NCBI RefSeq assembly: GCF_002113885.1
Contig: NW_018406672.1
Span: forward strand, 1,868,420 to 1,932,419
Length of the DNA: 64,000 nt
DNA from: Mizuhopecten yessoensis
Taxonomy: Eukaryota
Direction of reading: 5' to 3'
The notes beneath the pieces were generated by a model. The model was not told the DNA's origin. It did no database searches and saw only the letters and a program-made list of their open reading frames with translations. The position numbers and the translations under genes were made by a program. Below are positions 995 to 51,324 of the stretch, in pieces (within the stretch, counting starts at the first letter, position 1; each line of letters opens with the position of its first letter).

Positions 995-3907
995 GAAAAA
1001 ATATATATACATGTAGTAAGCCAACTACACATTATCAAGAAGCCATGCTTTTGTGTGTTTTATGCGCATTAAACGTCCATTCCGACCGACTGTAATACGC
1101 TTATTAAGGCATAGGGTTTCTCCTTGCTCTAATGGACGGGATGTACTATCAAATGAAAGGGTTCGAGGTTTACCTTGCCTCGTCGTGCAAAGTCAATACC
1201 TAGGTTTAAGCACATGATAAATAGCGTGACACGTGATAGCTGTTTGACAGAATATTGATTTTTAAGACAGATACTTATGTGTTCATGTCCAAAACTATTT
1301 TTATCCATTTATCTTCTGAATTTTCTCTCACTGCTGGTATTTATTGGACGTTCAGGACATCGCTAGTACCAGTAACATAGCCATAAAGGTTTACTCTACA
1401 AACACTAGATTCTTGCCGAATCAACCAAAACCAATCATTATCCTTTAATCCATTATGGACTAAACTTAATCACTGAGTAAACGGGTACGATGATTTATAA
1501 ATCATTTGTATTAATCAACTACAGGTCCCTACGCTGTTACGGAAACACCCGTCATCAACGAGATCGGGATTTTCCCGGAAAGTCGGTCAATCGATCGATC
1601 GATGCTTGATTCAGACCGGAAGATCGTGTCAGAAAGACTAGGCGTCTTAATCACGTGATATGTCAATCTTCATTATTTTTATCTACTGATCATAACAACT
1701 GTTTTACAATACAAAAGTTTTTTCTTTCTTTTTTTTGAAATGTTAAATCACGTAAGAATCATCCGATGCTGGTACCTCAATGAGGTGGTCTTATTTACAT
1801 GTATGCGTTTCAGATAAGAACACGGGGTTGAAAACCCAATAAAACATGTTATATGGGAGACTCTGGCATTGAAACAAAATTAATACTTGTTTTAATGATA
1901 TGTAGTGGTTTGTTATCAACAATATATAAGCCATTTATACATTGCTGTTTTACATTGTTGTTTGTTATTAATCTAAATTTGTTTCATGACAAGATTCGTT
2001 TGTCTACAGCATACATGTACATCGATAAATACATTTCATTTCTGTTATTGCTCATGCGAGTCCAGAAAATACATATTTGCGTGTTTCGGATTTTTTTTCT
2101 TGTGGAATATAAGGTAGAAGCGCGTAATATAGGACTGCGGCATTCACTGGACATCGTTAAGGTCAAACGTCCTTAATCCGACCCACCCTTATCAGACGTC
2201 ATACATATTGGTACTCACAAGTGTTATGTATACGAGTATGTTCCACACAACGTACTGAGGATCTGTCAGCCAGCTGTTTATCTGTAGAAGTACTGATAAA
2301 GGTACTTGACACACATGTATTGATGATGTAGACAACGTTCCATCAATTAATCGCCCCGTAGTATTCGGTCACTCTTCATTCATGGTAATACTACACGCGT
2401 AATAGAAATACTTCATGAGTTCTTATTGAAATTGGATTACAAAATTCAGTGACATTGTAACGATTATAAATGAAATAATCGATAACAACATAAAAACACA
2501 TTATATGACCCAACTGATTCATCGATAATCATAACTACAGTTGACTAATTTTAAAACCGAACGCGGCCATACGAAACGCCAGAGTCCAAATCAAACTGCC
2601 CGAAAAAATGGTAAGATCTTGAAGGATTTTTTATGAAAACATGTTGTAAAATACAAGAATAAGAATAAGATCTTTTTATAACTGCTTCCTCTCGGAAACG
2701 CATTGAAGCACATCGATACATACATTTTATACAATATTGGCTCTGGAAACGACTGGACCGGAAACACGCGATGTTTATGAGGGACCCGTTTACGTTTCAT
2801 TTTCCTTTATATCTGATCATAGTAATACTACATAGATAGTTAGCCCTAATAAGAAAACACACAATTATTGATTCCTCCCATTCACCACCAGCTAGCTGTA
2901 CTTACGTTTTCCCTCCTCTATCAGCCGACCAAAACGACAAACACACTGTTTAGTCATCAACCATGATCCGTCATATTCTTTGTTCAGCAGCGTTCACCAC
3001 ACAAACAGTCATCCTATGGCGCGCTGGCCATCATAACTTGAACATGTCCTTCACAGTTCGTCCACACGCCTCGGGAAATGCACGTCCATTTCGTAGGCTA
3101 GTACGCGACACTGGACATGTATGTGATCTGTGGTTGGGTTCGCCCGTAGTGAGACTAGAGAGCTCAGCCTCCGTACCGCGTAGTTCAGCAGCAGCAGTTT
3201 TCTGATCGATTTTAGTCCCAGTAATTGCTCCAGTAAAATTATTACGATACTTGCCGATCTTGGCATGCAAGGAGATACTAGAAATTTAACACTGAAACTC
3301 TTAACGAGAGCTGACTTCCGCGTCCCCGAGAGGCGAGAGGTTTATTGTCTCTTCCAAAACCGCATTTTCTTATTCTGTTTGTATTAAATATACATGACTT
3401 CTTATCTAATAAATAAGAGGTCCGGAGCATTTCAATGAAATCTTGCCAAGCGTTTGCTATGCCCATTCTACCGTGGGGAAAGACTCTCGACGGTGTCTGG
3501 TCAGACGATATCGGAAACACTCGGACTTATAGCATAATCAACTTAAATGTTCTGTTTTGTTTTATATGTCGGATATTACAGTGTATTGAATAACAATGGA
3601 AAGTGTCTACAAATATTTTTTGTTCAAGTTTTGAATATTTTTAAAATTAGTGTTTGGTTATTAAAATCAGTATAGCATATTTATCATTTTATCTCTGCCA
3701 TATTTAAAATATTACAGACGTTGCTCACCCTGTTGGTTTTCCGCATGCTCTTGAGACATATTATGCTTCAAACACTTGCCGCGATTAAACTAAATCATAA
3801 GTACTAGAAAATAAAGAAGATAGAACCAAACCATTACAAATAATTGATTTTATTACTATTTTAAAAACTCTTGCAACAAAATCATGTCAATCATTTAAAT
3901 GGTAAAT

Positions 3908-4413
3908 AACTTGAATCAACACAGTTCGATGCATAGGAACGCCTATAGTCTCATGGGGCACATAGCTCCGAACCGATACGGTCAGTTTGACAGAAGTGCC
4001 TTTCTTCGAGTCGGTTCAGTCAGATTATCAGTGCAACGGCACTTCCAAGTATCTAGTTCCAATTCGGCACGCAAACTTGCTCGAGTGTCTCTCTCTGTCT
4101 CGGCATGGTCATTTTGTGGTAGGTACAAGCTCCAAATTTAGAGGGCCAGTTTGACAGAAGTACTGTCTAAGCTCCAAATTCAAACGGATAATCTGGCAGA
4201 AGTTCATAGCTCCGAAATGGAATGGCCAGTCTGTGACAGTGCACAGCTCCGAATCGTCATGGTCAGTTTTGACTTTAGTGCCTAGCTTAGAATCGGCCTT
4301 GCTAGTTTGACAAACGTGCTTCGATCCGAATCGTCATGGACTGTTTGAGAGATTTCCCTCAACATGGTCAGTTTGAGGAGAGTTCAATGACTTGAATCAG
4401 CACGGCCTTTACC
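3908..4413. repeat. Diverged ~38-nt tandem repeat array (~13 units) in the putative 3'UTR, copy 1
   Basis: Units start at about 3908, 3964, 4002, 4055, 4091, 4128, 4170, 4208, 4245, 4284, 4322, 4360 and 4389. Plus-strand consensus AGCTCCGAATCGGCATGGTCAGTTTGACAGAAGTGCCT. Confidence 0.8.
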
Positions 4414-4694
4414 GTGTCTCTTCGATATGAGAAATAGTTTTCATCCAAAAGACTCTAGAGACGTCAGTCGTGAAACATTCTAGGAGTTCCTGCTGATTTT
4501 CCCTGCATGCGTATTCATCAGTTATCAGCATCTATAATATTATAGTTCATAATTTACCTGAATTCAAGCCGCGTTCAGGGTGAATCAAATTTTAAAACAA
4601 CAGTACAGGTCATAAAGAATTGACCATTACTAATCTAACCTCCTTGTCCAATCTAAAGCTGAACAGTCTTATACCTCGGTTCCCTGACCATTCC

Positions 4695-5965
4695 TTAAGC
4701 GAAACGCGTCCCCTTGTATTTCTTTATGTCCGTTGTTGTTGGAACCGGAAGTCCTGTGATGGGCGGAAGTATAACGTTAAGTACAGGGTGAAGTGTTGGT
4801 TCGTGCCGGGAGATGTGACGAAGAGGCTGTCCTACCGCGGAAATATTCCCTATCCGAGAGGTCCTCTTGTTGCATTTGTCCGTCAAAGACGGCAACGCTA
4901 TCTTGTTCATTTTATGGCCCAGCTTGTCCTGTGTAAATTGCTCTGAGCGGTTAGTGCTGTCCAGATATCCTTTTGTGACGTTTCTCTTCTTATCTACGGA
5001 CAGGCCAGCCACACTTATCGGAGGAAGTTCTGAAACAGCAGGTTTCGGTGCTACCGCATTACGCCAATAGTCATTTGTGTTTGTTAAGAGTTTCTCTGTC
5101 ATTTCTTGTTTTGGCGGTATTGCCTTCTTGTCATTCTGAGACATATTTTCAGTATTTGTTGAGCTGATCGGAGGAAGTTTCATTACATTCCTATCTTTTA
5201 GAATGTCCTTTCTCTCAATATTGTTCCAATTTGTTTGGCTTACGATCCTGTCATACTTCTTTGTTTTCCTTTTCCCGAAGGACACCGCGTTCCCGTTAAT
5301 TGGTGGTAAGACGCCGTTCTTCTGCTCGCCCAAGATTTCTTCATCAGGGAATTTTGAGTCAACGACATCACTACTGAATCGGTTGAAGAAGACATCATTT
5401 TTTCTATAAGCCTCGTATTCTGCATTCTTCTGATCAATCTCAGCTAGAAGCTGGTTAATGCCCGCGTCACGAGTTGTAGCAACAGGAGGACGGTTTGATG
5501 CTGTGGTGGTTTTACTTGTCTTAGTTTCTTCGATCTGCTTCTGAGCATCATTAATCACTTCCGGTCTCTTCTCATGTTGTCTGCTTATTCGAGGTAAAGC
5601 CGGTGCGGGCTTCCCTTTAGCATACAGTCCGGGAGTCAAGGTCTCGCGATTCTCTAGGAAAACGGAAACTTCTGTTTTCTCAGAATTTACATCAGTCTTG
5701 GCCTTTTTCTTGGCTCGACGACCCTTTTTGACCTTGCGGTCGACTTTTTCCTCTTCTCCAGTGACTGTCGTTTCCTGTGGTTTGGATTTATCGCCACTTT
5801 CACTTTTGGACGATTGCCTAGTAGGGAACTCTCTCGTGTGAAGGTTCAATTTAACAGCCATTTCGGCACTTCTTCGTTTTCCCGCCAAAGTCATGGCGCC
5901 ATTATACCCAGGAGGAAAGTTACCAGCTTTGCCTCTTGGTTGCCTCTTGATACCAAATTGAAGAT
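4695..5965 (-). CDS. Orphan Lys-rich LPPI-motif protein, copy 1 (main exon only; upstream exon lost at the assembly join)
   Basis: Open frame of more than 420 codons; acceptor TTCCTGTCATTCCAG at 5966; GCCATG at 5894; about 15 amino-acid differences from copy 2 with no stops or indels. Confidence 0.7.
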
Positions 5966-6372
5966 CTGGAATGACAGGAAGTAAACAGTCTTCGATTAAT
6001 ACCGATNTCGGAAACACTCGGACTTATAGCATAATCAACTTAAATTTTCTGTTTTGTTTTATATGTCGGATATTACAGTGTATTGAATAACAATGGAAAG
6101 CGTCTACAAATGTTTGTTGTTAAAGTTTTGAATGTTTTTTGAATAAGTGTTTGGTTATTAAAATGAATGTTACTTTAATGGCATATGTGTCACCCTGTTG
6201 GTTTTCCGCATGCTCTTCAGAAATATGATGCTGCAAACACTTGCTGCGATTTAACTAAATCATAAGTACTAGAAAATAAAGAAAATATAACCAAACCATT
6301 ACAAATAATTGGTTTTATTACTATTTAAAAAACTCTTGCAACAAAATCATGTCAATCCTTTAAATGGTAAAT

Positions 6373-6885
6373 AACTTGAATCAACACAGTTCGATACATA
6401 GGAACGCCTATAGTCTCATGGGGCACATACATTGTAGCTCCGAACCGACACGGTCAGTTTGACAGAAGTGCCTTTCTTCGAGTCGGTTCAGTCAGATTAT
6501 CAGTGCAACGGCACTTCCAAGTACCTAGTTCCAATTCGGCACGCAAACTTGCTAGAGTGTCTTTCTCTGTCTCGGCATGGTCATTTTGTGGTAGGTACAA
6601 GCTCCAAATTTAGAGGGCCAGTTTGACAGAAGTACTGTCTAAGCTCCAAATTCAAACGGATAATCTGGCAGAAGTTCATAGCCCCGAACTGGAATGGCCA
6701 GTCTGTGACAGTGCACAGCTCCGAATCGTCATGGTCAGTTTTGACTTTAGTACCTAGCTTAGAATCGGCCTTGCCAGTTTGACAAACGTGCTTCGATCCG
6801 AATCGGCATGGACTGTTTGAGAGATTTCCCTCAACATGGTCAGTTTGAGGGGAGTTCAATGACTTGAATCAGCACGGCCTTTACC
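6373..6885. repeat. Diverged ~38-nt tandem repeat array, copy 2
   Basis: Same units as 3908-4413. Lies between the stop codon (7168) and a minus-strand AATAAA (6314-6319). Confidence 0.8.
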
Positions 6886-7167
6886 GAGTCTCTTCGATAT
6901 GAGAAATAGTTTTCATCCAAAAGACTCTAAGAGCCGTCAGTCGTGAAACATTCTAGGAGTTCCTGCTGATTTTCCCTGCATGCGTATTCATCAGTTACCA
7001 GCATCTTTAATATTATAGTTCATAATTTACCTGAATTCAAGCCGCGTTCAGGGTGAATCAAATTTTAAAACAACAGTACAGGTCATAAAGAATTGACCAT
7101 TACTAATCTAACCTCCTCGTCCAATCTAAAGCTGAACAGTCTTATACCTCGGTTCCCTGACCATTCC

Positions 7168-9602
7168 TTAAGCGAAACGCGTCCCCTTGTATTTCTTCAT
7201 GTCCGTTGTTGTTGGAACCGGAAGTCCTGTGATGGGCGGAAGTATAACGTTAAGTACAGGGTGAAGTGTGGGTTCGTGCCGGGAGATGTGACGAAGAGGC
7301 TGTCCTACCTCGGAAATATTCCCTATCCGAGGGGTCCGCTTGTTGCATTTGTTCGTCAAAGACGGCAACGTTATCTTGTTCATTTTATGGCCCAGCTTGT
7401 CCTGTGTAAATTGCTCTGAGCGGTTAGTGCTGTCCAGATATCCTTTTGTGACGTTTCTCTTCTTATCTACGGACATCCCAGCCACACTTATCGGAGGAAG
7501 TTCTGAAACAGCAGGTTTCGGTGCTACCGCATTACGCCAATAGTCATTTGTGTTTGTTAAGAATTTCTCTGTCATTTCTTGTTTTGGCGGTATTGCCTTC
7601 TTGTCATTCCGAGACATATTTTCAGTATTTGTTGAGCTGATCGGAGGAAGTTTCATTGCATTCCTATCTTTTAGAATGTCCTTTCTCTCAATATTGTTCC
7701 AATTTGTTTGGCTTACGATCCTGTCATACTTCTTTGTTTTCCTTTTCCCGAAGGACACCGCGTTCCCGTTAATTGGTGGTAAGACGCCGTTCTTCTGCTC
7801 GCCTAAGATTTCTTCATCAGAGAATTTTGAGTCCACAACATCACTACTGAATCGGTTGAAGAAGACATCATTTTTTCTATAAGCCTCGTATTCTGCATTC
7901 TTCTGATCAATCTCAGCTAGAAGCTGGTTAATGCCCGCGTCACGAGTTGTAGCAACAGGAGGAAGGTTTGATGCTGTAGTGGTTTTTCTTGTCTTATTTT
8001 CTTCGATCTGCTTCTGAGCATCATTAATCACTTCCGGTCTCTTCTCATGTTGTCTGCTTATTCGAGGTAAAGCCGGTGCGGGCTTCCCTTTAGCATACAG
8101 TCCGGGAGTCAAGGTCTCGCGATTCTCTAGGAAAACGGAAATTTCTGTTTTCTCAGAATTTACATCAGTCTTGGCCTTTTTCTTGGCTCGACGACCCTTT
8201 TTGACCTTGCGGTCGACTTTTTCCTCTTCTCCAGTAACTGTCGTTTCCTGTGGTTTGGATTTATCGCCACTTTCACTTTTGGACGATTGCCTAGGAGGGA
8301 ACTCTCTCGTGTGAAGGTTCAATTTAACAGCCATTTCGGCACTTCTTCGTTTTCCCGCCAAAGTCATGGCGCCATTATACCCAGGAGGAAAGTTACCAGC
8401 TTTGCCTCTTGGTTGCCTCTTGATACCAAATTGAAGATCTGGAATGACAGGAAGCAAACAGTCTTCGATAAATACCAAACTACAGTTTTTCCTAACAGTA
8501 TCTATGTTATAACTGTGTATGTGTTTCTACAAATACATTTACTTCATACCTCAGGGTTCTGTTTCGCGAATGTCGTTAATTTGCTAGACAGCTGATCTCT
8601 CGAATTCAAATGGCTTGTGATTATCAATCGGGACAAAGTTGTGGACGGACTAAAGGAAAACTTTCAGTTAAGATTTTAATTTACACAGCATCTTATTTGT
8701 CATCCTCGGCTTAGTTAAGCTAAGAAACTGTAGTAAAAACTGAACCGGGTGCTGTATTGACTGACAAAAACTCAAGCTTTATAACTACACAACGATAACT
8801 GTCAATATTTGTTCAAGTTTCGCCCTCACAAATCTTCTTTAGCGAGATTTTTCCTTAACTTTCTAACACGGAATAAAGCATCACTTAATCTAAAGCACAT
8901 CCTAACTTAAGTTGTGGAACTCTAGTGAAACCCGGGTTAAGACCCAGTTCCACAAACGCTCCTAACTAACTCCAGCGATGTTTTTCAACAGAAACAAAAT
9001 AGGCCTAATTTCATTAACTACCGGAGTCAGCTGTTTGATATTGTTGTACACTCTGCAAACGGGACAAAGTCTTTGCCTTACTTCTGACCACATATTTAAT
9101 ACGCATGTATGGGTACGTATGTGTAATCGAGCCTATGGACTTTTCTACCGACCAAGGCACTGGGCTCAGACTAATTATTCCACAAGCTACGGGACTAATA
9201 CAATGATGTCAAGAACAGATTAAACAGTAGGATCCGTATAAGGGAGACAAGTGTTCCCCAATTACCCCCGGATATCTATATACACAAGTAACATGTTTTG
9301 TTGATGGAAAAGACTTGTGACACTTGGGTTAAGTTAAGTAGAACAATATTTTGCATTAAGTTCGAATTCTTACCGAATCGTTGAGAGTAAGGAGCTGTGA
9401 TCTCAAGTCTGTCCAGAGAGTCGGGAGTGTTAGCGCTGGTCAACCTTCGGACATTTCCCCCGGTCAAGATTTCAGGGAAGGCAGCTGTAAGAAGACCTGG
9501 ACCCTCGGGCATGCTTCGTCCACATTTTCGGCCCTGAACGTGACTTGCGTTCCTCAGAGACGACAAACCTCGGTTCTCGTGGATATCGGAATGGTTTATC
9601 AT
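7168..9602 (-). CDS. Orphan Lys-rich disordered LPPI-motif protein, copy 2. Model join(9602-9374, 8438-7168) = 499 aa, or 399 aa from the ATG at 8367
   Basis: Phase-1 donor TTCG|GTAAGA at 9373 joins in frame to the phase-1 acceptor TTCCAG|AT at 8439. Kozak-like GCCATG at 8367; poly(A) signal at 6314-6319. The ORF track's TTG start at 8478 falls in the intron. Confidence 0.7.
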
Positions 9603-9718
9603 CGTCTTGAATAGAGTATCTCGTGAAATTAAAAGTATTTTGAAGGAGCGAATATTTGCGTGTTGTTCTTTTCTGGTAGCCAGGGAAAGAATGGTGGGTT
9701 AATTGTTCCCCGAAGTTA

Positions 9719-9794
9719 TGACGTCATCAGGATTGTGACGTCACAGTAATTGTTAATCTCTTGCGTCAACATTGAAGGCGCTACAAAAATGGCG
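9719..9794 (-). promoter_or_regulatory. Promoter cluster: two perfect CRE palindromes, a CRE-like half site and a YY1-like motif
   Basis: TGACGTCA at 9719-9726 and 9736-9743, TGCGTCA at 9762-9768, AAAATGGCG at 9786-9794; about 115 bp upstream of the ATG at 9602. Confidence 0.6.
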
Positions 9795-10300
9795 ACATAA
9801 ACTTCGGTATGCCAGATACTATACTCTCAGATACCAATGTAAACGTCCGGAGCATTTCAATGAAATCTTGCCAAACGTTTGCTATGCTCATTCTACTGTG
9901 GGGAAAGACTCTCGACGGTGTCTGGTCAGTCGATATCGGAAACACTCGGACTTATAGCATAATCAACTTAAATTTTCTGTTTTGTTTTATATGTCGGATA
10001 TTACAGTGTATTGAATAACAATGGAAAGCGTCTACAAATGTTTGTTGTTAAAGTTTTGAATGTTTTTTGAATAAGTGTTTGGTTATTAAAATGAATGTTA
10101 CTTTAATGGCATATGTGTCACCCTGTTGGTTTTCCGCATGCTCTTCAGAAATATGATGCTGCAAACACTTGCTGCGATTTAACTAAATCATAAGTACTAG
10201 AAAATAAAGAAAATATAACCAAACCATTACAAATAATTGGTTTTATTACTATTTAAAAAACTCTTGCAACAAAATCATGTCAATCCTTTAAATGGTAAAT

Positions 10301-10813
10301 AACTTGAATCAACACAGTTCGATACATAGGAACGCCTATAGTCTCATGGGGCACATACATTGTAGCTCCGAACCGACACGGTCAGTTTGACAGAAGTGCC
10401 TTTCTTCGAGTCGGTTCAGTCAGATTATCAGTGCAACGGCACTTCCAAGTACCTAGTTCCAATTCGGCACGCAAACTTGCTAGAGTGTCTTTCTCTGTCT
10501 CGGCATGGTCATTTTGTGGTAGGTACAAGCTCCAAATTTAGAGGGCCAGTTTGACAGAAGTACTGTCTAAGCTCCAAATTCAAACGGATAATCTGGCAGA
10601 AGTTCATAGCCCCGAACTGGAATGGCCAGTCTGTGACAGTGCACAGCTCCGAATCGTCATGGTCAGTTTTGACTTTAGTACCTAGCTTAGAATCGGCCTT
10701 GCCAGTTTGACAAACGTGCTTCGATCCGAATCGGCATGGACTGTTTGAGAGATTTCCCTCAACATGGTCAGTTTGAGGGGAGTTCAATGACTTGAATCAG
10801 CACGGCCTTTACC
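10301..10813. repeat. Diverged ~38-nt tandem repeat array, copy 3
   Basis: Appears identical to copy 2, shifted by 3928 bp. Confidence 0.8.
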
Positions 10814-11095
10814 GAGTCTCTTCGATATGAGAAATAGTTTTCATCCAAAAGACTCTAAGAGCCGTCAGTCGTGAAACATTCTAGGAGTTCCTGCTGATTT
10901 TCCCTGCATGCGTATTCATCAGTTACCAGCATCTTTAATATTATAGTTCATAATTTACCTGAATTCAAGCCGCGTTCAGGGTGAATCAAATTTTAAAACA
11001 ACAGTACAGGTCATAAAGAATTGACCATTACTAATCTAACCTCCTCGTCCAATCTAAAGCTGAACAGTCTTATACCTCGGTTCCCTGACCATTCC

Positions 11096-13530
11096 TTAAG
11101 CGAAACGCGTCCCCTTGTATTTCTTCATGTCCGTTGTTGTTGGAACCGGAAGTCCTGTGATGGGCGGAAGTATAACGTTAAGTACAGGGTGAAGTGTGGG
11201 TTCGTGCCGGGAGATGTGACGAAGAGGCTGTCCTACCTCGGAAATATTCCCTATCCGAGGGGTCCGCTTGTTGCATTTGTTCGTCAAAGACGGCAACGTT
11301 ATCTTGTTCATTTTATGGCCCAGCTTGTCCTGTGTAAATTGCTCTGAGCGGTTAGTGCTGTCCAGATATCCTTTTGTGACGTTTCTCTTCTTATCTACGG
11401 ACATCCCAGCCACACTTATCGGAGGAAGTTCTGAAACAGCAGGTTTCGGTGCTACCGCATTACGCCAATAGTCATTTGTGTTTGTTAAGAATTTCTCTGT
11501 CATTTCTTGTTTTGGCGGTATTGCCTTCTTGTCATTCCGAGACATATTTTCAGTATTTGTTGAGCTGATCGGAGGAAGTTTCATTGCATTCCTATCTTTT
11601 AGAATGTCCTTTCTCTCAATATTGTTCCAATTTGTTTGGCTTACGATCCTGTCATACTTCTTTGTTTTCCTTTTCCCGAAGGACACCGCGTTCCCGTTAA
11701 TTGGTGGTAAGACGCCGTTCTTCTGCTCGCCTAAGATTTCTTCATCAGAGAATTTTGAGTCCACAACATCACTACTGAATCGGTTGAAGAAGACATCATT
11801 TTTTCTATAAGCCTCGTATTCTGCATTCTTCTGATCAATCTCAGCTAGAAGCTGGTTAATGCCCGCGTCACGAGTTGTAGCAACAGGAGGAAGGTTTGAT
11901 GCTGTAGTGGTTTTTCTTGTCTTATTTTCTTCGATCTGCTTCTGAGCATCATTAATCACTTCCGGTCTCTTCTCATGTTGTCTGCTTATTCGAGGTAAAG
12001 CCGGTGCGGGCTTCCCTTTAGCATACAGTCCGGGAGTCAAGGTCTCGCGATTCTCTAGGAAAACGGAAATTTCTGTTTTCTCAGAATTTACATCAGTCTT
12101 GGCCTTTTTCTTGGCTCGACGACCCTTTTTGACCTTGCGGTCGACTTTTTCCTCTTCTCCAGTAACTGTCGTTTCCTGTGGTTTGGATTTATCGCCACTT
12201 TCACTTTTGGACGATTGCCTAGGAGGGAACTCTCTCGTGTGAAGGTTCAATTTAACAGCCATTTCGGCACTTCTTCGTTTTCCCGCCAAAGTCATGGCGC
12301 CATTATACCCAGGAGGAAAGTTACCAGCTTTGCCTCTTGGTTGCCTCTTGATACCAAATTGAAGATCTGGAATGACAGGAAGCAAACAGTCTTCGATAAA
12401 TACCAAACTACAGTTTTTCCTAACAGTATCTATGTTATAACTGTGTATGTGTTTCTACAAATACATTTACTTCATACCTCAGGGTTCTGTTTCGCGAATG
12501 TCGTTAATTTGCTAGACAGCTGATCTCTCGAATTCAAATGGCTTGTGATTATCAATCGGGACAAAGTTGTGGACGGACTAAAGGAAAACTTTCAGTTAAG
12601 ATTTTAATTTACACAGCATCTTATTTGTCATCCTCGGCTTAGTTAAGCTAAGAAACTGTAGTAAAAACTGAACCGGGTGCTGTATTGACTGACAAAAACT
12701 CAAGCTTTATAACTACACAACGATAACTGTCAATATTTGTTCAAGTTTCGCCCTCACAAATCTTCTTTAGCGAGATTTTTCCTTAACTTTCTAACACGGA
12801 ATAAAGCATCACTTAATCTAAAGCACATCCTAACTTAAGTTGTGGAACTCTAGTGAAACCCGGGTTAAGACCCAGTTCCACAAACGCTCCTAACTAACTC
12901 CAGCGATGTTTTTCAACAGAAACAAAATAGGCCTAATTTCATTAACTACCGGAGTCAGCTGTTTGATATTGTTGTACACTCTGCAAACGGGACAAAGTCT
13001 TTGCCTTACTTCTGACCACATATTTAATACGCATGTATGGGTACGTATGTGTAATCGAGCCTATGGACTTTTCTACCGACCAAGGCACTGGGCTCAGACT
13101 AATTATTCCACAAGCTACGGGACTAATACAATGATGTCAAGAACAGATTAAACAGTAGGATCCGTATAAGGGAGACAAGTGTTCCCCAATTACCCCCGGA
13201 TATCTATATACACAAGTAACATGTTTTGTTGATGGAAAAGACTTGTGACACTTGGGTTAAGTTAAGTAGAACAATATTTTGCATTAAGTTCGAATTCTTA
13301 CCGAATCGTTGAGAGTTAGGAGCTGTGATCTCAAGTCTGTCCAGAGAGTCGGGCGTGTTAGCGCTGGTCAACCTTCGGACATTTCCCCCGGTCAAGATTT
13401 CAGGGAAGGTAGCTGTGAGAAGACCTGAACCCTCGGGCATGCTTCGTCCACATTTTCGGCCCTGAACGTGATTTGCGTTCCTCAGAGACGACAAACCTCG
13501 GTTCTCGTGGATATCGGAATGGTTTATCAT
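11096..13530 (-). CDS. Orphan LPPI-motif protein, copy 3; join(13530-13302, 12366-11096)
   Basis: Main exon translates identically to copy 2; exon 1 differs by four amino acids. Confidence 0.7.
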
Positions 13531-13646
13531 CGTCTTGAATAGAGTATCTCGTGAAATTAAAAGTATTTTGAAGGAGCGATTATTTGCGTGTTGTTCTTTT
13601 CTGGTAGCCAGGGAAAGAATGGTGGGTTAATTGTTTCCAGAAGTTA

Positions 13647-13722
13647 TGACGTCATCAGGATTGTGACGTCACAGTAATTGTTAATCTCTTGCGTCAACAT
13701 TGAAAGCGCTACAAAAATGGCG
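13647..13722 (-). promoter_or_regulatory. Double-CRE promoter cluster, copy 3
   Basis: TGACGTCA at 13647-13654 and 13664-13671; conserved between copies despite nearby substitutions. Confidence 0.6.
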
Positions 13723-15329
13723 ACATAAACTTCGGTATGCCAGATACTGTACTCTCAGATACCAATGTAAACGTTTCATTTTGCTTGTTAAGCGTTTTTT
13801 AAATCAAATTACAAACACACGACCAAAACATGCAATCAGATTAAAATCATCTGTTAGGCTCCGTTAACTTCGTACTACGCCAGAACCATGAAACAGATGG
13901 TCAAAACATGATATTTGCATTAAAAATATACCTTTTTCATTCAAAAATGGAATTACATACATTCACCTCAAACTAGTTTTTACGTTTTAGAAATTAGGAG
14001 ATGAAAGTATGGTATTAATACCAAGCACAGATGTGGTGGTGTGCTGTGTTTGTATCATCAAATCAACGTTTTGGATCAGGACTAGGCTTGAACATCCGGG
14101 TATACGTTTTAAATTTTTCATCTGTCTTTTTTCCCCACACTATTAAAAATGCACATTTCACAATGTCATGAGTGTTAACATCGTGTTTTTAGATGCATGC
14201 TCTTATTTATCATTTTGTAAGTAGCGCGTATTTGAATGAAAAGCGCATGTTTTTGAGATGTAAAACATTGAATATTGCAAAGCTTAACACGCCTTAGTCT
14301 GCGTCCTCCCAAAAGGGGAATGACACACTCTATATATGTATACATGTACTAGTTTATGTAACGTAGAGATCATGGGGCGAGGTTCTGTACTACGCCTCTA
14401 TTGTTCTATATACGCTGTCTCCAGCACACATACAACTTACCTTTTTACCCCCACCATTCCGATCACAATTTTCGAGGATAAAGTTCACTTATAATTTGTT
14501 CCAACTGTAGATTTCGTTTCTTTCTTTAAATTAAGTCCATGAACTAGTTGGACCCTAAACAACTGCATAGGGCATCACGTTTTGACACACAACTTTTGTT
14601 ATTTTTTCGAAAGTGAACACCCGAAGCAGTTTCAAAAATGTATGATAAACGTTCCAGATCGGTACCTCAAGTTATATATATGCCAGTGTTAAGCTACCGA
14701 TTAAAATGTCTATCATGGCCAATATTTTATTATAGAATAAATATCTATGTTAAAGTATTTCGTTGTTCCCTTGAATATATACAGTACTACACACAGCATA
14801 TCTATAACATGGACTAATCTTAAGGTTGCTACAAACAATTTTGTAAATATTTAAATATTCCCTCTGTGAATTGATATATCCATATCCTTAGTCGCAAACA
14901 AAACCCCTCATAATTTTCACCACCAACTAATTACCGTTTCAATTTCGAATTGCACACTACACGCTACCTTTATTGCACATACAACGGAATGCATCTGTCG
15001 CTATAAGTATTGAGATGCTTTTACCTAGTATTCGATCTCAGACATGAGTTACGTTCGCTGATACCAGGGGGCGCCAGTGAGTCTCACAGAGGATACCGGC
15101 GTGTAGATTCTATGTCATCGGTATAATTATCACGGGTGTATAAATCTTTTTATTTAATCAAACATGTATGATGGATAATAATATTCCGAGAATTTATTTG
15201 ATTCGTATTGCTGTAAGTGCCAATCGTATGATTCTGGAACCGTGTGCCATGAATTGAAGTGTCTCCTCATATTCTCACTTAATGTGACGAAAGACGTATA
15301 TTACACACCTTTATTAAAAATTCCATTAA

Positions 15330-33958: not shown

Positions 33959-34170
33959 CAGGTCCAAGTATAGCTGTATCAAATTTTCAGGTCCCTGTGT
34001 AAGTACCAGTCTAGGTCCAAGTATAGCTGTATCAAATTCTCAGGTCCCTGTGTAAGTACCAGTCTAGGTCCAAGTATAGCTGTATCAAATTCTCAGGTCC
34101 CTGTGTAAGTACCAGTCTAGGTCCAAGTATAGCTGTATCAAATTAGCAGGTCCCTGTGTAAGTACCAGTC
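33959..34170. repeat. 53-bp tandem repeat, about 4 copies
   Basis: CAGGTCCCTGTGTAAGTACCAGTCTAGGTCCAAGTATAGCTGTATCAAATTCT; GGTCCAA recurs at 33961 and 34014. Confidence 0.95.
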
Positions 34171-34361: not shown

Positions 34362-37300
34362 ATGTCAATCAAAACAATAAGACAGGATGTGTATGCAGAT
34401 GAACAGAAGGAGGATATTGGGGCAGTTGTACGGCGCAGCATTGGATTGCCAGAGGTATATTACATGTATAACTTAATACAGACATATATAATACAGAAGT
34501 CATAGTTGCAACATTGAAATGGCAGAAGTACACAATGAATTTATAATTTCCAAATCTCCAGCTGGACTAGTGGTTCTATAAACAGCTTCTGTAGCCCGAT
34601 TGACTCGTCAAATTTTGATGAACTAAAAGGTATATAATCGTCATATTTGGCTGGAGGCTTCCTGAGATGAAGCCCAACAAAGTTTAAAAATGAAAATGAC
34701 CTCGACGTACTTTCAAGGTCACAGCAGTCAAATATGTCAAAACGCTTCAAACGACTTCTTCTGAAGAATTAAAAGGTATAGAATCTTCATATTTCGCTGT
34801 TGGCTTCCTTGGATGGAGCCCGATAAAGTTTGAGAATGAAATTGACCTTGACTTACTTTCAAGGTCACAGCGGTCAAATATGTAAAACATTTCAAACGAC
34901 TTCTTCTGATGAATTAAAAGGTATAGAATCTTTATATTTGGCTGTTGGCTTCCTGAGATAGAGCCAGACAAAGTTTGAAAATGAAAATGACCTTGACATA
35001 CTTTCATGGTCACAGCGGTCAAATATGTTGACTTCAAACAACTTCTTCTGAAAAACTAAAAGGTATAACATCTTCATATTTGGTTGATGGCTTCCTGGGA
35101 TGGACCCCAACATATTTTGAAAATGACCTTGATGTACATGTATTTTCAAGGTCACAGCAGTCAAATATGTCAAAACACTTCAAACGACTTCTTCTGAAGA
35201 ATTAAAAGGTATAGAATCTTCATATTTCGCTGTTGGCTTCCTTGGATGGAGCCCGATAAAGTTTGAGAATGAAATTGACCTTGACTTACTTTCAAGGTCA
35301 CAGCGGTCAAATATGTCAAAAACATCAAACTGCTTCTTCTGAATAATTGAAAGCATAAAATTATAATATTTGGCTGGTGGCTTCCTAGGATAGAGCTCAC
35401 CAAAGTTTGTGAATGAAAATGACCTCAACCTACCTTAAAGGACAGAGATCAACAACATTTTAAAGGATTTGTTCTCAAGAACCAAATGGAATGGATTCAT
35501 AAGATTTGGCTGGTAGCTTTTTGGGATAGAGATAACAAAGTGTGAGAAGGAAAATGACATTGACCTACTTACAAGGTCACAGGGAAAAATATGTCAATTT
35601 ACTTCTGAAGAAGAACCAAAAAGCATAGAATCTTATAATAATATTTGGCTGGTAGTTTCAACAGATGGAGCCGACAAAGTTTGCGAGGGAAATATTTGTA
35701 GTGCAATATACTATTGAATGAGAATATTTTGCTTTAACTGCTTAAATATTCAGGTGAGCAATACAGGCCCTCTGGGCCTCTTGTTTAAGGGTGAATTTAA
35801 GGCCCTTATTCCCCCTAAGATAATTTCTGCTAAATTATCCCAATATCAATGCAAAAATCACTTTATTTTCCCAAAATCATGTTTTCTTTATGGGTGACAT
35901 TTTTCCAAAGTCGCAAGACACAGGTCCCTGTGGAGAGGAGGTAGAAAAATCACTGCTCTAAGTAATACATTGTAGATGAATGCTGGAGCTGTGAAATAGC
36001 AGCAGTACAATCTAGCAAAGCAATGGTATAGTAGTAAAAGATGAGAACTTGAAAAGCTAAACTTCAACTTTTATTTTGTACATATTTTTTTTTGCCAAGG
36101 TTGATTACTTGGATCCGTTTCTGATGCTGGATGAGTTTTATGTGACGCCTCCAGCAGGGTTCCCCGACCATCCTCACAGAGGGTTTGAGACCGTAAGTAT
36201 AGAATGAGATACATATTTACCCTTTCACCCCTTATGTAACTTAAGTAAACTCTTCCATGCATTGATCTGGATGAGTCCATGATGGTCTACAGTGGTGAAA
36301 GGGTTAAAATGAAGTCCTTTGAGAATATATTTACATAGCTTAAATTTCTTATGTTTTACAGATATTTTAAAAACTATGATTGAGCTTCACTTTAATAATT
36401 ATTGCACTGTAATCATGTTGAATTGTTAATTTGTAATCTACAGGTATCATATGTACTGCAAGGGGCCGGGATGCACGAGGATTGTTGTGGCCACAAGGGG
36501 ACGCTACACGCTGGTGATGTACAGGTGAGAACACCAGTGACCAGGTAGCTGACCTATATAGTCAGTTTTATAGGGCATTATTATAGTCATCTCAGGACAC
36601 AGGAAACCACCCATAGCATGTCAGCAAGAAGTACTTTTCTTCAGGTGGCAGGTGATTTTAGAATCTTACTAGTCCCTGCAACAAGTAGAAACAGATGAAA
36701 ACTTTTTTATCAACAAAAAATAGATTTTCATGATTTATTTGTATGTCATCATCTAGTTTTTGGCTGTATATTTATTATACAAAGGTCAAGGTCACATTGA
36801 GGTGTTAAAACAAACGTGGTGCTTGTCTTGACAAAAACTATAAATGAACAGTTGAACATATTTTCATGAGACGCCTTCATTTCTGAACAGCTAAATATAA
36901 TTATATTGACTCTTGTGCTTGAACAGTCAAGACCACAACAAGGGGTCAAATGTCATATCATTTATATTATTTTTGTACGAGCAGTGGATTTTGAATTAGT
37001 TACATGTACTTTATTGGTTTAATGGTAAATAAGAGGTGGCTATATCATGGTTAGACAATACTCCAGAAAGCTTATTTATCAAACTAAACATGAACATACT
37101 TGAACGGATTTGACACTTCTGTCATGTAGTTCTTTATGACACGATATTATTTTGGTACATTAAGACTTTAAAATGAAAAAATACTCAAAGGGATGTAAAC
37201 GCAAGGTATAAATCTTATTTTGTTGTCTGAGAAATAAATTGGACAATTTTTAGCTCACCTGCCCGAAGGGCAAGTGAGCTTATGTCGTGGTGCGGCGTCC

Positions 37301-40300
37301 GTCGTCCGTCCGTCATCCGTCCGTGTCCGTCAACTTTTCCTTTAAACAACTTCTTCTGAAGAACGGACAAGCCTAGAGTCATGATATTTGGCTGAAAGCT
37401 TTGTTGGTAGGAGCCCTACAAAGTTTGAGAACGAAAATGACCTTGACCTACTTTAAAGGTCACAGGGGTCAAATATGTCAAAAACTTCAAACGACTTCTT
37501 CTGAAGAACTAAAAGGTATAGAATCTTCATATTTGGCTGATGGCTTCCTGGGATGGAGCTTAACAAAGTNNNNNNNNNNNNNNNNNNNNNNNNNNNNNNN
37601 NNNNNNNNNNNNNNNNNNNNNNNNNNNNNNNNNNNNNNNNNNNNNNNNNNNNNNNNNNNNNNNNNNNNNNNNNNNNNNNNNNNNNNNNNNNNNNNNNNNN
37701 NNNNNNNNNNNNNNNNNNNNNNNNNNNNNNNNNNNNNNNNNNNNNNNNNNNNNNNNNNNNNNNNNNNNNNNNNNNNNNNNNAATGACATTGACCTACTTA
37801 CAAGGTCACAGGGAAAAATATGTCAAGCAACTTCTGAAGAATCAAAAAGCGTAGAATCTTGTAATAATATTTTGCTGGTAGTTTCAACAGATGGAGCCAA
37901 CAAAGTTTGCGAGGGAAATATTTTTAGTGCAATATAATATTTAATGAGAATATTTTGCTATGACTGCTTAAATATTCAGGTGAGCGATACAGGCCCTCTT
38001 GGGCCTCTTGTTTTTTTAAATCTGCACCAAACAGCATTAGATTTTTGCATAAAATAGAGTTATTCCCAGTGCAAAACCTGTCTGATCATAAATGACTCCT
38101 GCTCACAGAAGAAACTTAAAGAACTTTATCGAAAGCAAACAGGATGATGTTAAGGTAAAGTGCATGGTGTGTATTTGTTTTGAAGTGGATGACCGCTGGT
38201 CGAGGGATTGTCCACTGTGAGATGCCCCACGGCACCGAGGAGGTGCATGGCCTACAACTGTGGGTTAATCTAGCCAGCAAGGACAAGATGATTGAGCCAG
38301 CCTATCAGGAACTCCTGGACAAAGACATTCCACGGGTCACTAAGGACAATACCACTGTCAAGGTCATCGCTGGGGAATCCCAGGGTGTTGAGGTCAGTTT
38401 GTGTGATAGTAGTGGGTACAATATCCTGCTATTTATATTTACACATGAAAGAAGAAACTGTTTTCCCCACTATAATGTAGGTCTGCGACTGTACTTGTTT
38501 GTATCTGGTCAAATCCTTACCAACAGTTTGACATGCATTGAAATTTTTGAAATTGCAAATGTACTCAGACAAATCCAGATTTTTTCTGTTGTGATGAATT
38601 TGCAGTTTCCAGATTGTTGGGTATCCCTTGTTTCTTTACTACGTGGGTGTAATACTGTTTTGCTGTTATATGAAAGTTGCTGATCTACCAGTTTGTGGAA
38701 AATGGAAAATAAAACTGCCACAAAAATGGCCTAGATTCATTCAAAGCCTATAAATTATTTAACACCAGGGTTTTCTGTAGGGAGATTCTTAAACATTTTG
38801 TCGACAATGATTAGAAGGAGTGGGAATGGGAAAAGTGCTGTATTGTGTGGTCTGTGAGTCATTAGTAATCAATAAGGAAGGTTCAGTTCTTTACTGAACG
38901 AAGAATATGATGGTTAAGTCAGTTTTACTAAATCTCATCCCCTTCACTGTTTAATGGGGCCGCGGTGGTCAAGTAGTTAAGGCGTCCGACATTCTGCTAC
39001 CACTAGCCTTCCACCACTGGGTCGCGGGTTCGAAGCCTACGTGGGGCAGTGGCCAGGTACATGTACTGGCCATAGGTCGGTGTTTGTTCTGTGGGAACTC
39101 TGGCTTTCCTCCACCACCAAACCACCATAGCTGTTAATAGGATGTAAAAAACATACAAACCAAATTCACTGTTTCAAATTGTTAGAAGAAATGTCACGGC
39201 CACTAGATTGTGAACGTAAGAAATGTCACGGCCACTAGATTGTGAACGTAAGAAATGTCACAGCCACTAGATTGTGAACGTAAGAAATTTCACGGCCACT
39301 AGATTGTGAACGTAAGAAATGTCACGGCCACTAGATTGTGAACGTAACTCTTTTTGTTTTAGTCACCAATGCTGACCAGGACACCAACAATATATTTAGA
39401 CTTCAAGATGCAGAAAGACGGCAAACTGGTTCAGCCAATCAAGAAGGGCTGGAATACTTTTGTTTATATACTTAGCGGTAAAGCCACGTTTGGTAAGTGT
39501 CGGCTACATTTTACATTTAAAGTCTGAAATTCTGCCTGGGCTCAACCTAACATACACTTAAACATTAACTATTAAAACAGGCTGGTAACCTCAACATTTT
39601 ATTTGTTAAATCATAGCTCAACTCTCCTTAGGAGGGAGACTCCATCACTTTGACCAATCTCCCTCGAAACTCCCTCATTCAAGTCCAAACTCACACGAAC
39701 TCAAAAACTACATCCTGTGGCCAAATGAACTCCTGGTTACTGCAGGGTGTGTGTAATAATCATAACAAGTGTGTCTGAATCAAATGAATGCTCTTTGGAG
39801 TTATTTTGATACATAAAAGGTGAGAGATAAATTGAGCAAAGCAATTTCAGTCACATTTCATGCATTTTGTCCCTCATTGGAAATGTGGAATGAGGGAGAT
39901 CTCCCTCACTGGGGGTTTCAGAGATTGACACCTACTTTGTATGTTGTATTATCTAAATCTCATGAAAAAATATTGAAACCGTTGTTTGCATGTTAAGGCA
40001 AGGATATTTCAGACATATGACCGGTAATGTTTTTAGGCTCCACAACAGTATTGTTACTGTGCTTTGAAGACTTGGTAATAAAGACTGGATTCTATGTATG
40101 TGGTATATGAATACCACTAATTCTACTAATACACGTCTGCTGTAAGAATGTTAATGCAAGGGGTTTAAATTTGGAAATTAACACTCCCCAAAATAAAGTA
40201 TATTGAAAGTTTATTGCACTTGCACAAAAAGATGAAAAAAAATATTAATATATTTGCCGAATATGATAGGTATAAAGTTGAAGGTAAATGACCAAACAAT

Positions 40301-44627: not shown

Positions 44628-45490
44628 TCCCTGTAGTGGTCGTAGCCTACTTTTGAAGTAAGCACCCTGTATAGTAGCTGTAGTCTACTCAAACTTTTGA
44701 AGTAAGCACCCTGTGTAGTGGCTGTTGTCTACTTAAACTTTTGAAGTAAGCACCCTGTATAGTAGCTGTAGTCTACTCAAACTTTCGAAGTAAGCACCCT
44801 GTGTAGTGGCTGTAGTCTACTCAAACTTTTGAAGTAAGCACCATGTGAAGTGACTGAAGTCTACTCAAACTTTTGAAGTAAGCACCCTGTATAGTAGCTG
44901 TAGTCTACTCAAACTTTCGAAATAAGCACCCTGTGTAGTGGCTGTAGTCTACTCAATTTTTTGAAGTAAGCACCCTGTATAGTAGCTGTAGTCTACTCAA
45001 ACTTTCGAAATAAGCACCCTGTGTAGTGGCTGTAGTCTACTCAATTTTTTGAAGTAAGCACCCTGTATAGTAGCTGTAGTCTACTCAAACTTTTGAAGTA
45101 AGTACCCTGTATAGTAGCTGTAGTCTGCTCAAACTTTTGAAGTAAGCACCCTGTGTAGTAGCTGTAGTCTACTCAAACTTTTAAGGTAAGCACCCTGTGT
45201 AGTGGCTGTAGTCTACTCAAACTTTCGAAGTAAGCACCCTGTGTAGTGGCTGTAGTCTACTCAATTTTTTGAAGTAAGCACCCTGTATAGTAGCTGTAGT
45301 CTAGTCAAACTTTTGAAGTAAGCACCCTGTGTAGTGGCTGTAGTCTACTCAAACTTTTGAAGTAAGCACCCTGTGAAGTGACTGAAGTCTTCTCAAACTT
45401 TTGAAGTAAGCACCCTGTGAAGTGACTGAAGTCTACTCAAACTTTTGAAGAAAGCACCCTGTGTAGTTTACTCACACTCTTGAAGCAAGT
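44628..45490. repeat. 44-bp minisatellite, about 19-20 copies
   Basis: GAAGTAAGCACCCTGT(A/G)TAGT(A/G)GCTGTAGTCTACTCAAACTTTT; period 44 (44655, 44699). An isolated unit lies at ~46011-46052. Confidence 0.97.
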
Positions 45491-51228: not shown

Positions 51229-51324
51229 TTTGTCTGATGAAGGTGACAGTGTACATATCGTACTATAGTCATCGAAACGTCACACAGAAAATCTTATTGG
51301 TTGTGTAAAAAGAACTTTTCATAA
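51229..51324 (+). ncRNA. Penelope-type minimal type I hammerhead ribozyme motif within a ~95-bp repeat
   Basis: TGT-CTGATGA-A-GGTGAC-(agt GTAC atatc GTAC tata)-GTCATC-GAAA-CG-TC-ACA. Complete core, 6-bp stem II, palindromic ACGT stem III, TGT/ACA stem I; predicted cut after C51281. Confidence 0.7.

What the first reader, a model, noticed from the sequence alone, without database searches (positions are those of the whole stretch)
3908..10813. Hidden array of ~13 diverged 38-nt repeats in the putative 3'UTR of every cassette copy
Seen in sequence: between the stop codon and AATAAA, each copy (3908-4413, 6373-6885, 10301-10813) has mostly 36-42 nt units. Better-conserved blocks (AGCTCCGAAT, GGTCAGTTTG, GTGCCT) appear to alternate with two more variable ~6-nt segments. 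The period is not a multiple of three, so it is non-coding. On the mRNA strand the consensus AGGCACTTCTGTCAAACTGACCATGCCGATTCGGAGCT contains mini-hairpins GTCA-AAC-TGAC and CCG-ATT-CGG. The units are far more diverged from each other than the 3.9-kb copies are, so the array is old yet has kept its phase. Inference: a multimeric RNA element (translational-control or localisation sites) or a precursor of phased small RNAs. The conserved/variable alternation loosely recalls dual-spacer guide arrays, but a decayed minisatellite remains the null model.
Basis: partly seen in the sequence, partly recalled or inferred. Interest (0 to 1): 0.7.

Follow-up and report, generated by a model that had tools for sequence, protein, structure and literature searches.

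The report
Old decayed minisatellite in scallop 3'UTR
The 3' untranslated end of a scallop-specific gene carries a real, transcribed array of about a dozen worn-down 38-base repeats that four scallop genera share, but it has changed about as fast as silent DNA, so it is most likely an ordinary ageing minisatellite, not a hidden RNA device.

Summary
The array is real. Lag-38 autocorrelation beats 1000 shuffles, there are 7 clear units plus about 5 degenerate ones per copy, and the coordinates are as given. The genome is Mizuhopecten yessoensis. The gene has two exons on the minus strand and encodes a 499-aa protein with no Pfam match. Its stop codon is at 4695/7168/11096, not near 4413, and AATAAA is at 3849-3854/6314-6319/10242-10247.

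Spliced RNA contigs run unbroken from the coding end through the array, so the array lies in the 3'UTR. A homologous 36-38-nt array sits at the same place in Pecten maximus (37 nt x 21 copies, re-amplified), Argopecten irradians and Ylistrum balloti. It is therefore older than the split of these genera.

Every test for constraint came back neutral or weak. Units of different species are 55-62% identical, about the same as four-fold sites of the gene. Paralogue divergence in the array (2.4%) matches dS (2.8%). The mini-hairpins are not kept, RNAalifold finds no pairs, and folding z is +0.6. Column unevenness is weak and partly CpG decay. The unit is not dispersed in the genome.

Verdict: an ancient, neutrally decaying 3'UTR minisatellite. 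A multivalent regulatory role is not excluded (about 0.25). The scan has noted other 3'UTR minisatellites elsewhere in this genome.

The parts
3966..4421 (-). Array, cassette copy A: 12-13 diverged 38-nt units. The clear units are at 3964-4377, and degenerate remnants reach 3905.
6438..6894 (-). Array, cassette copy B (remnants reach 6373). An RNA contig covers it without a break from 7309 down to 6435.
10366..10822 (-). Array, cassette copy C, identical to copy B.
6895..7167 (-). Proximal single-copy 3'UTR of copy B. It contains a block (about 6955-7049) that still aligns in all four scallops.
7168..7170 (-). True stop codon TAA of copy B (A: 4695-4697; C: 11096-11098). All orthologues end at the same position.
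6314..6319 (-). First AATAAA after the array in copy B (A: 3849-3854; C: 10242-10247). In the other three species a poly(A) signal likewise follows 40-120 nt after the array.
7171..8438 (-). Exon 2 coding part, copy B.
8439..9373 (-). Intron (GT..AG on the minus strand), skipped in an RNA contig of run X4.
9374..9603 (-). Exon 1 of copy B, as far as the RNA contig reaches. The start codon ATG is at 9602-9600.

Best explanation
This is an ancient minisatellite that is carried in the 3'UTR of a Pectinidae-restricted gene and is transcribed as a passenger.

Inferred history: a unit of about 37-38 nt (mRNA-strand ancestral consensus close to AGACACTTCTGTCAAACAGACCGTACCGATTCGGAGAA) was amplified head-to-tail, by slippage or unequal exchange, between the stop codon and the poly(A) signal. 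This happened in or before the common ancestor of Mizuhopecten, Pecten, Ylistrum and Argopecten.

Since then, in M. yessoensis and Y. balloti, the units have simply decayed by point mutation and small indels at about the neutral rate, with CpG sites decaying fastest. They became too unlike one another for further slippage, which is why the phase is still visible although TRF no longer sees the array. In P. maximus (37 nt x 21 copies, 93%) and A. irradians (72-nt double unit x 3.2 copies) single units were re-amplified later.

Shown: the array exists, is in the mRNA, is shared by four genera, is unique in the genome, has no conserved structure, and changes at a neutral-like rate. Inferred: the mode of origin, and the absence of any sequence-specific function.
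For: - Array and period.
- In the mRNA. Contig 6435-7309 is unbroken, the splice 8438|9374 has GT..AG ends, and there is no intron or intergenic coverage.
- Orthologous arrays on the same strand and at the same place between stop and poly(A) signal. Wrap-around scores are 198-1232 against a shuffle maximum of 38.
- Neutral-like rate between species: units of different species are 55-62% identical, and units within the M. yessoensis array 61%. Four-fold sites of the same gene are 57-59% identical among My/Pm/Yb (K4 0.60-0.64). The simulated substitution probability that reproduces the unit-to-consensus identity is about 0.27-0.32 (K about 0.33-0.41). That matches the per-lineage K4 of about 0.3.
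- Neutral-like rate between paralogues A and B: array 2.4% (11/457), against dS 2.8% (8/283), dN 1.5% and proximal UTR 1.5%.
- A single-copy block in the same UTR is better kept (72.6% My-Pm) than the array units.
- CpG columns are the least conserved and carry TG/CA replacements.
- No structure. No Rfam match.
- Tandem arrays are frequent in this genome. The same 64-kb window holds five other sizeable ones. Earlier scan notes report other 3'UTR minisatellites in this genome (those notes are unchecked).
Against: - The array has persisted at the same place in four genera from two subfamilies.
- It was independently re-amplified in two lineages.
- Per-column conservation is more uneven than a uniform star-like decay model in every species. 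The unevenness is weakly but significantly shared between species (mean Spearman 0.205 against 0.006 +/- 0.056 in simulations). It is still 0.16 (permutation p about 0.02) after the CpG columns are dropped.
- Units of A. irradians are more like those of the other species (55-57%) than four-fold sites are (42-47%). Alignment bias and recent re-amplification could explain this.
- The rate tests have low power: about 80 four-fold sites and 11 paralogue differences.
- Run X1 shows few differences from the reference within the array. Paralogue mapping makes that uninterpretable.
Confidence: 0.6

Rival explanations
1. Multivalent cis-regulatory 3'UTR platform. Each unit carries a short linear motif (the best-kept columns are AG.CA..TCTG.CAAA and GATT...A) that is bound by an RNA-binding protein or a small RNA. 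Selection acts on the number of adequate sites, not on each unit. Units may therefore decay and be replaced by re-amplification, and the array tunes translation, stability or localisation of the mRNA.
For: The array is in the mRNA. It has been retained between stop and poly(A) signal in four genera. It was re-amplified in P. maximus and A. irradians. There is weak shared column unevenness beyond CpG. The re-amplified P. maximus unit is closer to the ancestral consensus (32/38) than most decayed units (19-31/38).
Against: Unit divergence equals four-fold and synonymous divergence, both between species and between paralogues. No motif is kept in more than about 85-90% of units. Nothing like the unit occurs elsewhere in the genome, so no regulon is visible. 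A single-copy block in the same UTR is better conserved.
Confidence: 0.25
2. Precursor of phased or repeat-associated small RNAs (piRNA- or siRNA-like), or an array of small hairpins that is processed from the 3'UTR.
Against: There is no excess folding energy on either strand (z +0.60 and +0.25). RNAalifold finds no pairs in 35 units. The hairpin pairs are broken in most units and in the dominant P. maximus and A. irradians units. The only double change (G-C to A-T at columns 28/32) is two CpG transitions. The RNA contig spans the array intact at a depth at least equal to that of the CDS.
Confidence: 0.04
3. Remnant of a mobile element that carried an internal satellite, as in the tandem-repeat-bearing MITE/Helitron-like elements of bivalves, and that inserted into the ancestral 3'UTR. 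This concerns origin only.
For: An 18-nt direct repeat flanks the array (3905-3922 / 4386-4403, 16/18 identical). Bivalve genomes are rich in such elements (own knowledge).
Against: The flanking repeat is itself a degenerate piece of the unit (GTGCTGATTCAAG aligns to GT.CCGATTCGGAG), not a target-site duplication. BLAST of the array finds only the cassette copies and two small contigs. The 21-mer core with up to 3 mismatches matches at control level (20 against 17). The ancestral 27-mer has no match. The age of the array means that old dispersed copies could have decayed beyond detection.
Confidence: 0.06
4. DNA-level element (an array of binding sites for a DNA-binding protein, a terminator/pause region, or a recombination hotspot) that acts on the tandem gene cluster.
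For: The array lies about 0.7 kb upstream of the next copy's start in the M. yessoensis tandem cluster.
Against: The other three species show a single gene copy in the fetched loci yet keep the array. Rates are neutral-like. There is no test of binding.
Confidence: 0.05

Closest known systems
3'UTR minisatellites/VNTRs, e.g. the 40-bp VNTR in the 3'UTR of human SLC6A3/DAT1 (own knowledge; a paper on it was listed)
   Same: It is a head-to-tail array of units of about 40 nt. It lies between stop codon and poly(A) signal, is transcribed with the mRNA, sits at a single locus, and differs in copy number between lineages.
   Different: Here most units are old and about 40% diverged from each other. 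No length variation was seen within the species. The array is shared by genera whose silent sites differ by 0.6-1.1 substitutions per site.
Exon-edge and stop-codon minisatellites noted elsewhere in this same genome by the scan (s1-510891, s1-517157, s1-535770)
   Same: They are tandem arrays in 3'UTRs of Yesso scallop genes, and were judged by-products of a repeat-rich genome.
   Different: Those units copy the exon end or the stop codon and look young. This unit has no detectable source in the gene, starts about 275 nt after the stop codon, and is ancient.
Multi-site regulatory 3'UTRs and repeat RNAs: lin-14/lin-41 microRNA site clusters, and Xenopus Xlsirt 79-81-nt repeat transcripts used in RNA localisation (own knowledge)
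   Same: They have many copies of a short element in one transcript.
   Different: Those sites are kept by selection or have a shown partner. Here no partner is known, the units evolve at the silent-site rate, and no structure is conserved.
Tandem-repeat-bearing mobile elements of bivalves (pearl / MITE-like / Helitron-related satellite carriers; own knowledge)
   Same: They are short-unit tandem arrays embedded in unique DNA of a bivalve genome.
   Different: This array is not dispersed, since only the cassette copies match in 988 Mb. It has no termini and no target-site duplication.

Membership tests
Minisatellite (tandem repeat, unit 10-100 bp, single locus) | Head-to-tail units of constant period | tested here: met
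   Spacings are 37-42 nt. The lag-38 autocorrelation is reached by 0 of 1000 shuffles. There are 12-13 units by wrap-around alignment.
Minisatellite (tandem repeat, unit 10-100 bp, single locus) | Confined to one locus, not a dispersed family | tested here: met
   Only the cassette copies and two small contigs match. Core-motif matches are at control level. The ancestral 27-mer has 0 matches.
Minisatellite (tandem repeat, unit 10-100 bp, single locus) | Copy-number turnover by slippage or unequal exchange | tested here: met
   Between species the arrays have about 13, 17-22, 20-25 and 36 units. There are young re-amplifications in P. maximus (37 nt x 21.3, 93%) and A. irradians (72 nt x 3.2).
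Minisatellite (tandem repeat, unit 10-100 bp, single locus) | Length polymorphism within the species (VNTR) | tested here: inconclusive
   Contigs of two other individuals (X1, X4) cross most of the array without unit-sized indels. Two runs, with paralogue collapse, are too few to decide.
Selectively constrained cis-regulatory 3'UTR element | Present in the mature mRNA | tested here: met
   X4 contig 6435-7309 is unbroken. The exon 1-exon 2 joint 8438|9374 has GT..AG ends. There is no coverage of the intron or the spacer.
Selectively constrained cis-regulatory 3'UTR element | Present in orthologues at the same position | tested here: met
   L025, L026 and L027 carry arrays between the stop codon and the first poly(A) signal, on the sense strand.
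Selectively constrained cis-regulatory 3'UTR element | Evolves more slowly than neutral sites | tested here: not met
   Units between species are 55-62% identical against 57-59% at four-fold sites. Between paralogues the array differs by 2.4% against dS 2.8%. Power is low.
Selectively constrained cis-regulatory 3'UTR element | The same positions are conserved in independent lineages | tested here: inconclusive
   Mean Spearman between species is 0.205 (simulations 0.006 +/- 0.056). It is 0.16 (p about 0.02) without the CpG columns. Single pairs range from -0.08 to 0.41.
Structured RNA repeat / small-RNA precursor array | Folding more stable than shuffled sequence | tested here: not met
   z is +0.60 on the mRNA strand and +0.25 on the opposite strand.
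Structured RNA repeat / small-RNA precursor array | Base pairs kept, with compensatory changes, across units and species | tested here: not met
   RNAalifold predicts 0 pairs in 35 units. Hairpins are intact in 1-7 units per species. The only double change is explained by CpG decay.
Structured RNA repeat / small-RNA precursor array | Small RNAs mapping in phase | not testable with these tools
TE-borne satellite (MITE/Helitron-like carrier) | Many dispersed copies with shared termini and target-site duplication | tested here: not met
   The array is not dispersed. The flanking 18-nt direct repeat is a degenerate piece of the unit.

The most novel reading that the evidence does not exclude
The array is a multivalent regulatory platform maintained by selection across Pectinidae. 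The mRNA of this lineage-restricted, basic, disordered protein would need many weak copies of a linear motif (around UCUGUCAAAC / GAUUCGGAG) for a scallop RNA-binding protein or small RNA. Lineages would restore site number by re-amplifying a good unit when decay goes too far, as in P. maximus and A. irradians. This would be birth-and-death evolution of 3'UTR sites, which can look nearly neutral per unit.
Probability: 0.2. Interest if true: 0.55.

Novelty: new member of a known kind. Interest (0 to 1): 0.25.

Why it matters
As it stands, this is a tidy worked example and not a discovery. It shows that a tandem array can stay recognisable and in phase after about 0.3-0.4 substitutions per site per lineage, because it becomes too diverged to slip. 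It also shows that such fossil arrays escape TRF yet can be dated against silent sites of the host gene. The work corrects the gene model around the array (true stop codon, poly(A) signal, two-exon structure, a chimeric database protein). If the minority reading were true, the array would be a rare case of a multi-site 3'UTR regulatory module traceable across a molluscan family, with natural gain and loss of sites to exploit experimentally.

Tried and rejected
- TRF on the window misses the array.
- Rfam at a permissive threshold over 3400-10000 gave no match.
- Pfam on the ORFs, including the 92-aa ORF inside the array, gave nothing.
- A period of 37-38 nt in all four species excludes a coding repeat.
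- The target-site-duplication idea for the 18-nt flanking repeat was rejected, because the repeat is part of a degenerate unit.
- The dispersed-family idea was rejected.
- A second 38-nt minisatellite that shares a 15-mer (L014) has only one other copy in the genome and a different unit layout. It is probably chance.
- A search for unit-by-unit orthology between species, using a collinear chain of shared derived states, gave no signal. It therefore cannot tell a frozen array from one that has turned over.
- Searching the C-terminal 160 aa alone, to catch partial transcript ORFs from further scallop species, gave no hits. No closely related species pair was available.
- Two raw RNA-seq runs of the species laid 0 reads on the gene. 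This is uninformative, because the tissue is unknown.
- The literature search for conserved 3'UTR tandem repeats in bivalves found nothing specific. Divergence times of the genera were not stated in the text of the papers read, so age is given in substitutions per site only.
- The large representative protein search was not used, as the claim does not rest on the protein.
- The single N at 6007 was avoided in all calls.
Full report
**What the window is.** The assembly has 987,588,634 bases in 82,659 contigs. These are the figures published for Mizuhopecten yessoensis (PMC7191990). The best protein match is 'hypothetical protein KP79_PYT12443 [Mizuhopecten yessoensis]'. Positions 3420-13774 hold a tandemly repeated cassette with a period of 3928 bp. 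It carries a gene on the minus strand.

**Gene model.**
- The long ORF (4695-6017, 7168-8478, 11096-12406) has no Pfam family.
- The database protein P0001 and its orthologues in Ylistrum balloti, Pecten maximus and Argopecten irradians (46-48% identity) all end at the same C-terminus.
- Contigs of run X4 cover 6435-8438 and 9374-9603. They skip 8439-9373, whose ends read CT..AC on the plus strand, which is GT..AG on the gene's strand. They leave the intron and the spacer uncovered, so X4 is spliced RNA.
- The gene therefore has two exons. In copy B the ATG is at 9602-9600, the intron is 9373-8439, the stop TAA is at 7170-7168, and the first AATAAA is at 6319-6314.
- Run X1 covers everything and contains the 9935-to-6008 junction. 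It behaves as DNA and confirms the tandem arrangement in another sample.
- Copies B and C are identical over 2.4 kb, and copy A differs by about 2%. Copy A lacks the intron and exon 1 next to a single N at 6007.

**The observation.**
- The repeat finder gives seven copies in register, spaced 37-42 nt apart.
- A unit HMM finds seven full units and one partial unit in each copy, and nothing comparable elsewhere in the window.
- The autocorrelation maximum is at lag 38 (0.371). None of 1000 dinucleotide shuffles reaches it.
- Wrap-around alignment to a cyclic consensus resolves 12-13 units (6894-6438 in copy B), most of them 35-42 nt long.
- The 18-nt direct repeat that brackets the array is a degenerate part of the unit, not a target-site duplication.
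- The array as described is therefore real.

**In the mRNA.** One 874-nt X4 contig runs from 7309 (inside the CDS) to 6435 without a joint. Its depth is at least that of the coding contigs. The array is thus part of the 3'UTR. It starts about 275 nt after the stop codon and ends about 50-120 nt before the poly(A) signal.

**Related sequences.**
- The array occurs nowhere else in the genome apart from two small contigs that look like extra or allelic cassette pieces.
- The 21-nt core with up to 3 mismatches matches at control level (20 against 17). The ancestral 27-mer has no match.
- The three orthologous loci are collinear with the cassette. Each has a homologous array on the sense strand between its stop codon and the first poly(A) signal.
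- P. maximus has 37 nt x 21.3 copies at 93%, plus decayed flanking units, about 36 units in all.
- A. irradians has about 20-25 units, including a 72-nt double unit x 3.2 copies.
- Y. balloti has about 17-22 decayed units that TRF does not see.
- Wrap-around scores are 198, 210, 350 and 1232, against a shuffle maximum of 38.
- The species consensus sequences differ at only 3-6 of 38 positions.
- The array therefore predates the split of these genera, which belong to two subfamilies (PMC7191990).

**Is it constrained?** Five tests were run.
1. *Rate between species.* Aligned units of different species are 55-62% identical. Units within the M. yessoensis array are 61% identical and those within the Y. 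balloti array 55%. Four-fold degenerate sites of the same gene are 57-59% identical among Mizuhopecten, Pecten and Ylistrum (K4 0.60-0.64), and 42-47% identical in comparisons with Argopecten. The substitution probability needed in simulations to reproduce the unit-to-consensus identity is 0.27-0.32, or K 0.33-0.41. This is about the per-lineage K4. An array that was homogeneous around the time of the common ancestor and has decayed neutrally since then fits these numbers.
2. *Rate between paralogues A and B.* The array differs by 2.4%, dS is 2.8%, dN is 1.5%, the proximal UTR differs by 1.5% and the distal UTR by 2.7%.
3. *Column pattern.* The variance of conservation exceeds that of uniform star-like decay in all species (0 of 60 simulations). 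The profiles correlate weakly between species (0.205 against 0.006 +/- 0.056). The six CpG columns are the least conserved and carry TG/CA replacements. Without them the correlation is 0.16, with permutation p about 0.02. Shared ancestry of units also inflates the variance.
4. *Structure.* Folding z is +0.60 and +0.25. RNAalifold finds no pairs in 35 units from four species. The two mini-hairpins are intact in a minority of units and are broken in the dominant P. maximus and A. irradians units. The one double change is two CpG transitions. There is no Rfam match.
5. *Internal control.* A single-copy block of the proximal UTR (about 6955-7049) still aligns in all four species, at 72.6% between Mizuhopecten and Pecten. 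That is better than the array units.

**Conclusion.** The best-supported explanation (about 0.6) is an old minisatellite that arose in the ancestral 3'UTR and has since decayed at the neutral rate. It survives as a phase-preserving fossil because diverged units no longer slip, and it was re-amplified in two lineages. The main rival (about 0.25) is a multivalent platform of weak linear sites under selection for number instead of sequence. Retention, re-amplification and the weak shared column signal are compatible with that rival, but the rate tests give it no support. Small-RNA precursor, mobile-element remnant and DNA-level readings are each unlikely, for the reasons listed under the rival explanations.

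**Context.** Tandem arrays are common here, with five other sizeable ones in this window. Earlier notes of this scan describe other 3'UTR minisatellites in the same genome (those notes are unchecked). The closest known kind is the 3'UTR VNTR, such as the 40-bp repeat of human SLC6A3 (own knowledge). This array is an old, decayed member of that kind, shared across genera.

**Limits.**
- The rate tests rest on about 80 four-fold sites and 11 paralogue differences.
- Alignment to a consensus inflates identities somewhat.
- Transcription of the array is shown only for M. yessoensis, and from contigs, which cannot show transcript ends.
- Small RNAs, binding partners and within-species polymorphism were not testable.

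Noticed in passing
window 6008-8490 vs 9936-12418; 3420-6006: Cassettes B and C are identical (0 differences in about 2.4 kb). Copy A differs by about 2% in the transcribed part, but by 10.6% plus many indels in the 310 nt downstream of the poly(A) signal. Copy A lacks the intron and exon 1 next to a single N at 6007. This points to either a very recent duplication with gene conversion or a partly artefactual assembly. A DNA-like run does contain the 9935-to-6008 junction.
   Followed up: partly
window 13302-13530 and 4695-5977 (protein P0001): The database protein KP79_PYT12443 joins the exon-1 variant found at 13530 with the exon-2 variant of copy A. It therefore looks like a model spliced across different cassette copies.
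   Followed up: partly
window 9841-9929; L025 21728-21814: An 89-nt non-coding block lies 300-400 nt beyond the poly(A) signal and is 77.5% identical between M. yessoensis and P. maximus. That is better than silent sites. Its function is unknown.
   Followed up: no
window about 6955-7049 (copy B proximal 3'UTR); L025 19828-19922; L026 about 12040-12080 and its 117-nt duplicate; L027 about 12975-13010: A single-copy 3'UTR block with the core GATGAATGCGCATGCG ... CAGGAACTCCTG is kept in all four scallops. It is a better candidate for a functional UTR element than the array. In Y. balloti it lies inside a 117-nt tandem duplication (L026 12000-12234).
   Followed up: partly
L014 1465-1649 (G000:C2941:1118563-1118747): Another local 38-nt minisatellite (4.9 copies, 85%) shares the 15-mer GGTCAGTTTGACAGA with the array unit but is otherwise different. 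Only one other copy exists in the genome. The shared 15-mer is probably chance.
   Followed up: yes
window 33960-34170, 34616-35425, 39186-39347, 44649-45467, 61718-62880: Five further tandem arrays (periods 53, 146, 32, 44 and 135-155 nt) lie in the same 64 kb. This shows how repeat-rich the genome is.
   Followed up: no
L025 10225-18673: The single intron of the orthologue is about 8.4 kb in P. maximus, against 0.94 kb in M. yessoensis and about 0.64 kb in Y. balloti.
   Followed up: no
window 51229-51324: Another first-stage note flags a minimal hammerhead ribozyme here. It was not examined.
   Followed up: no
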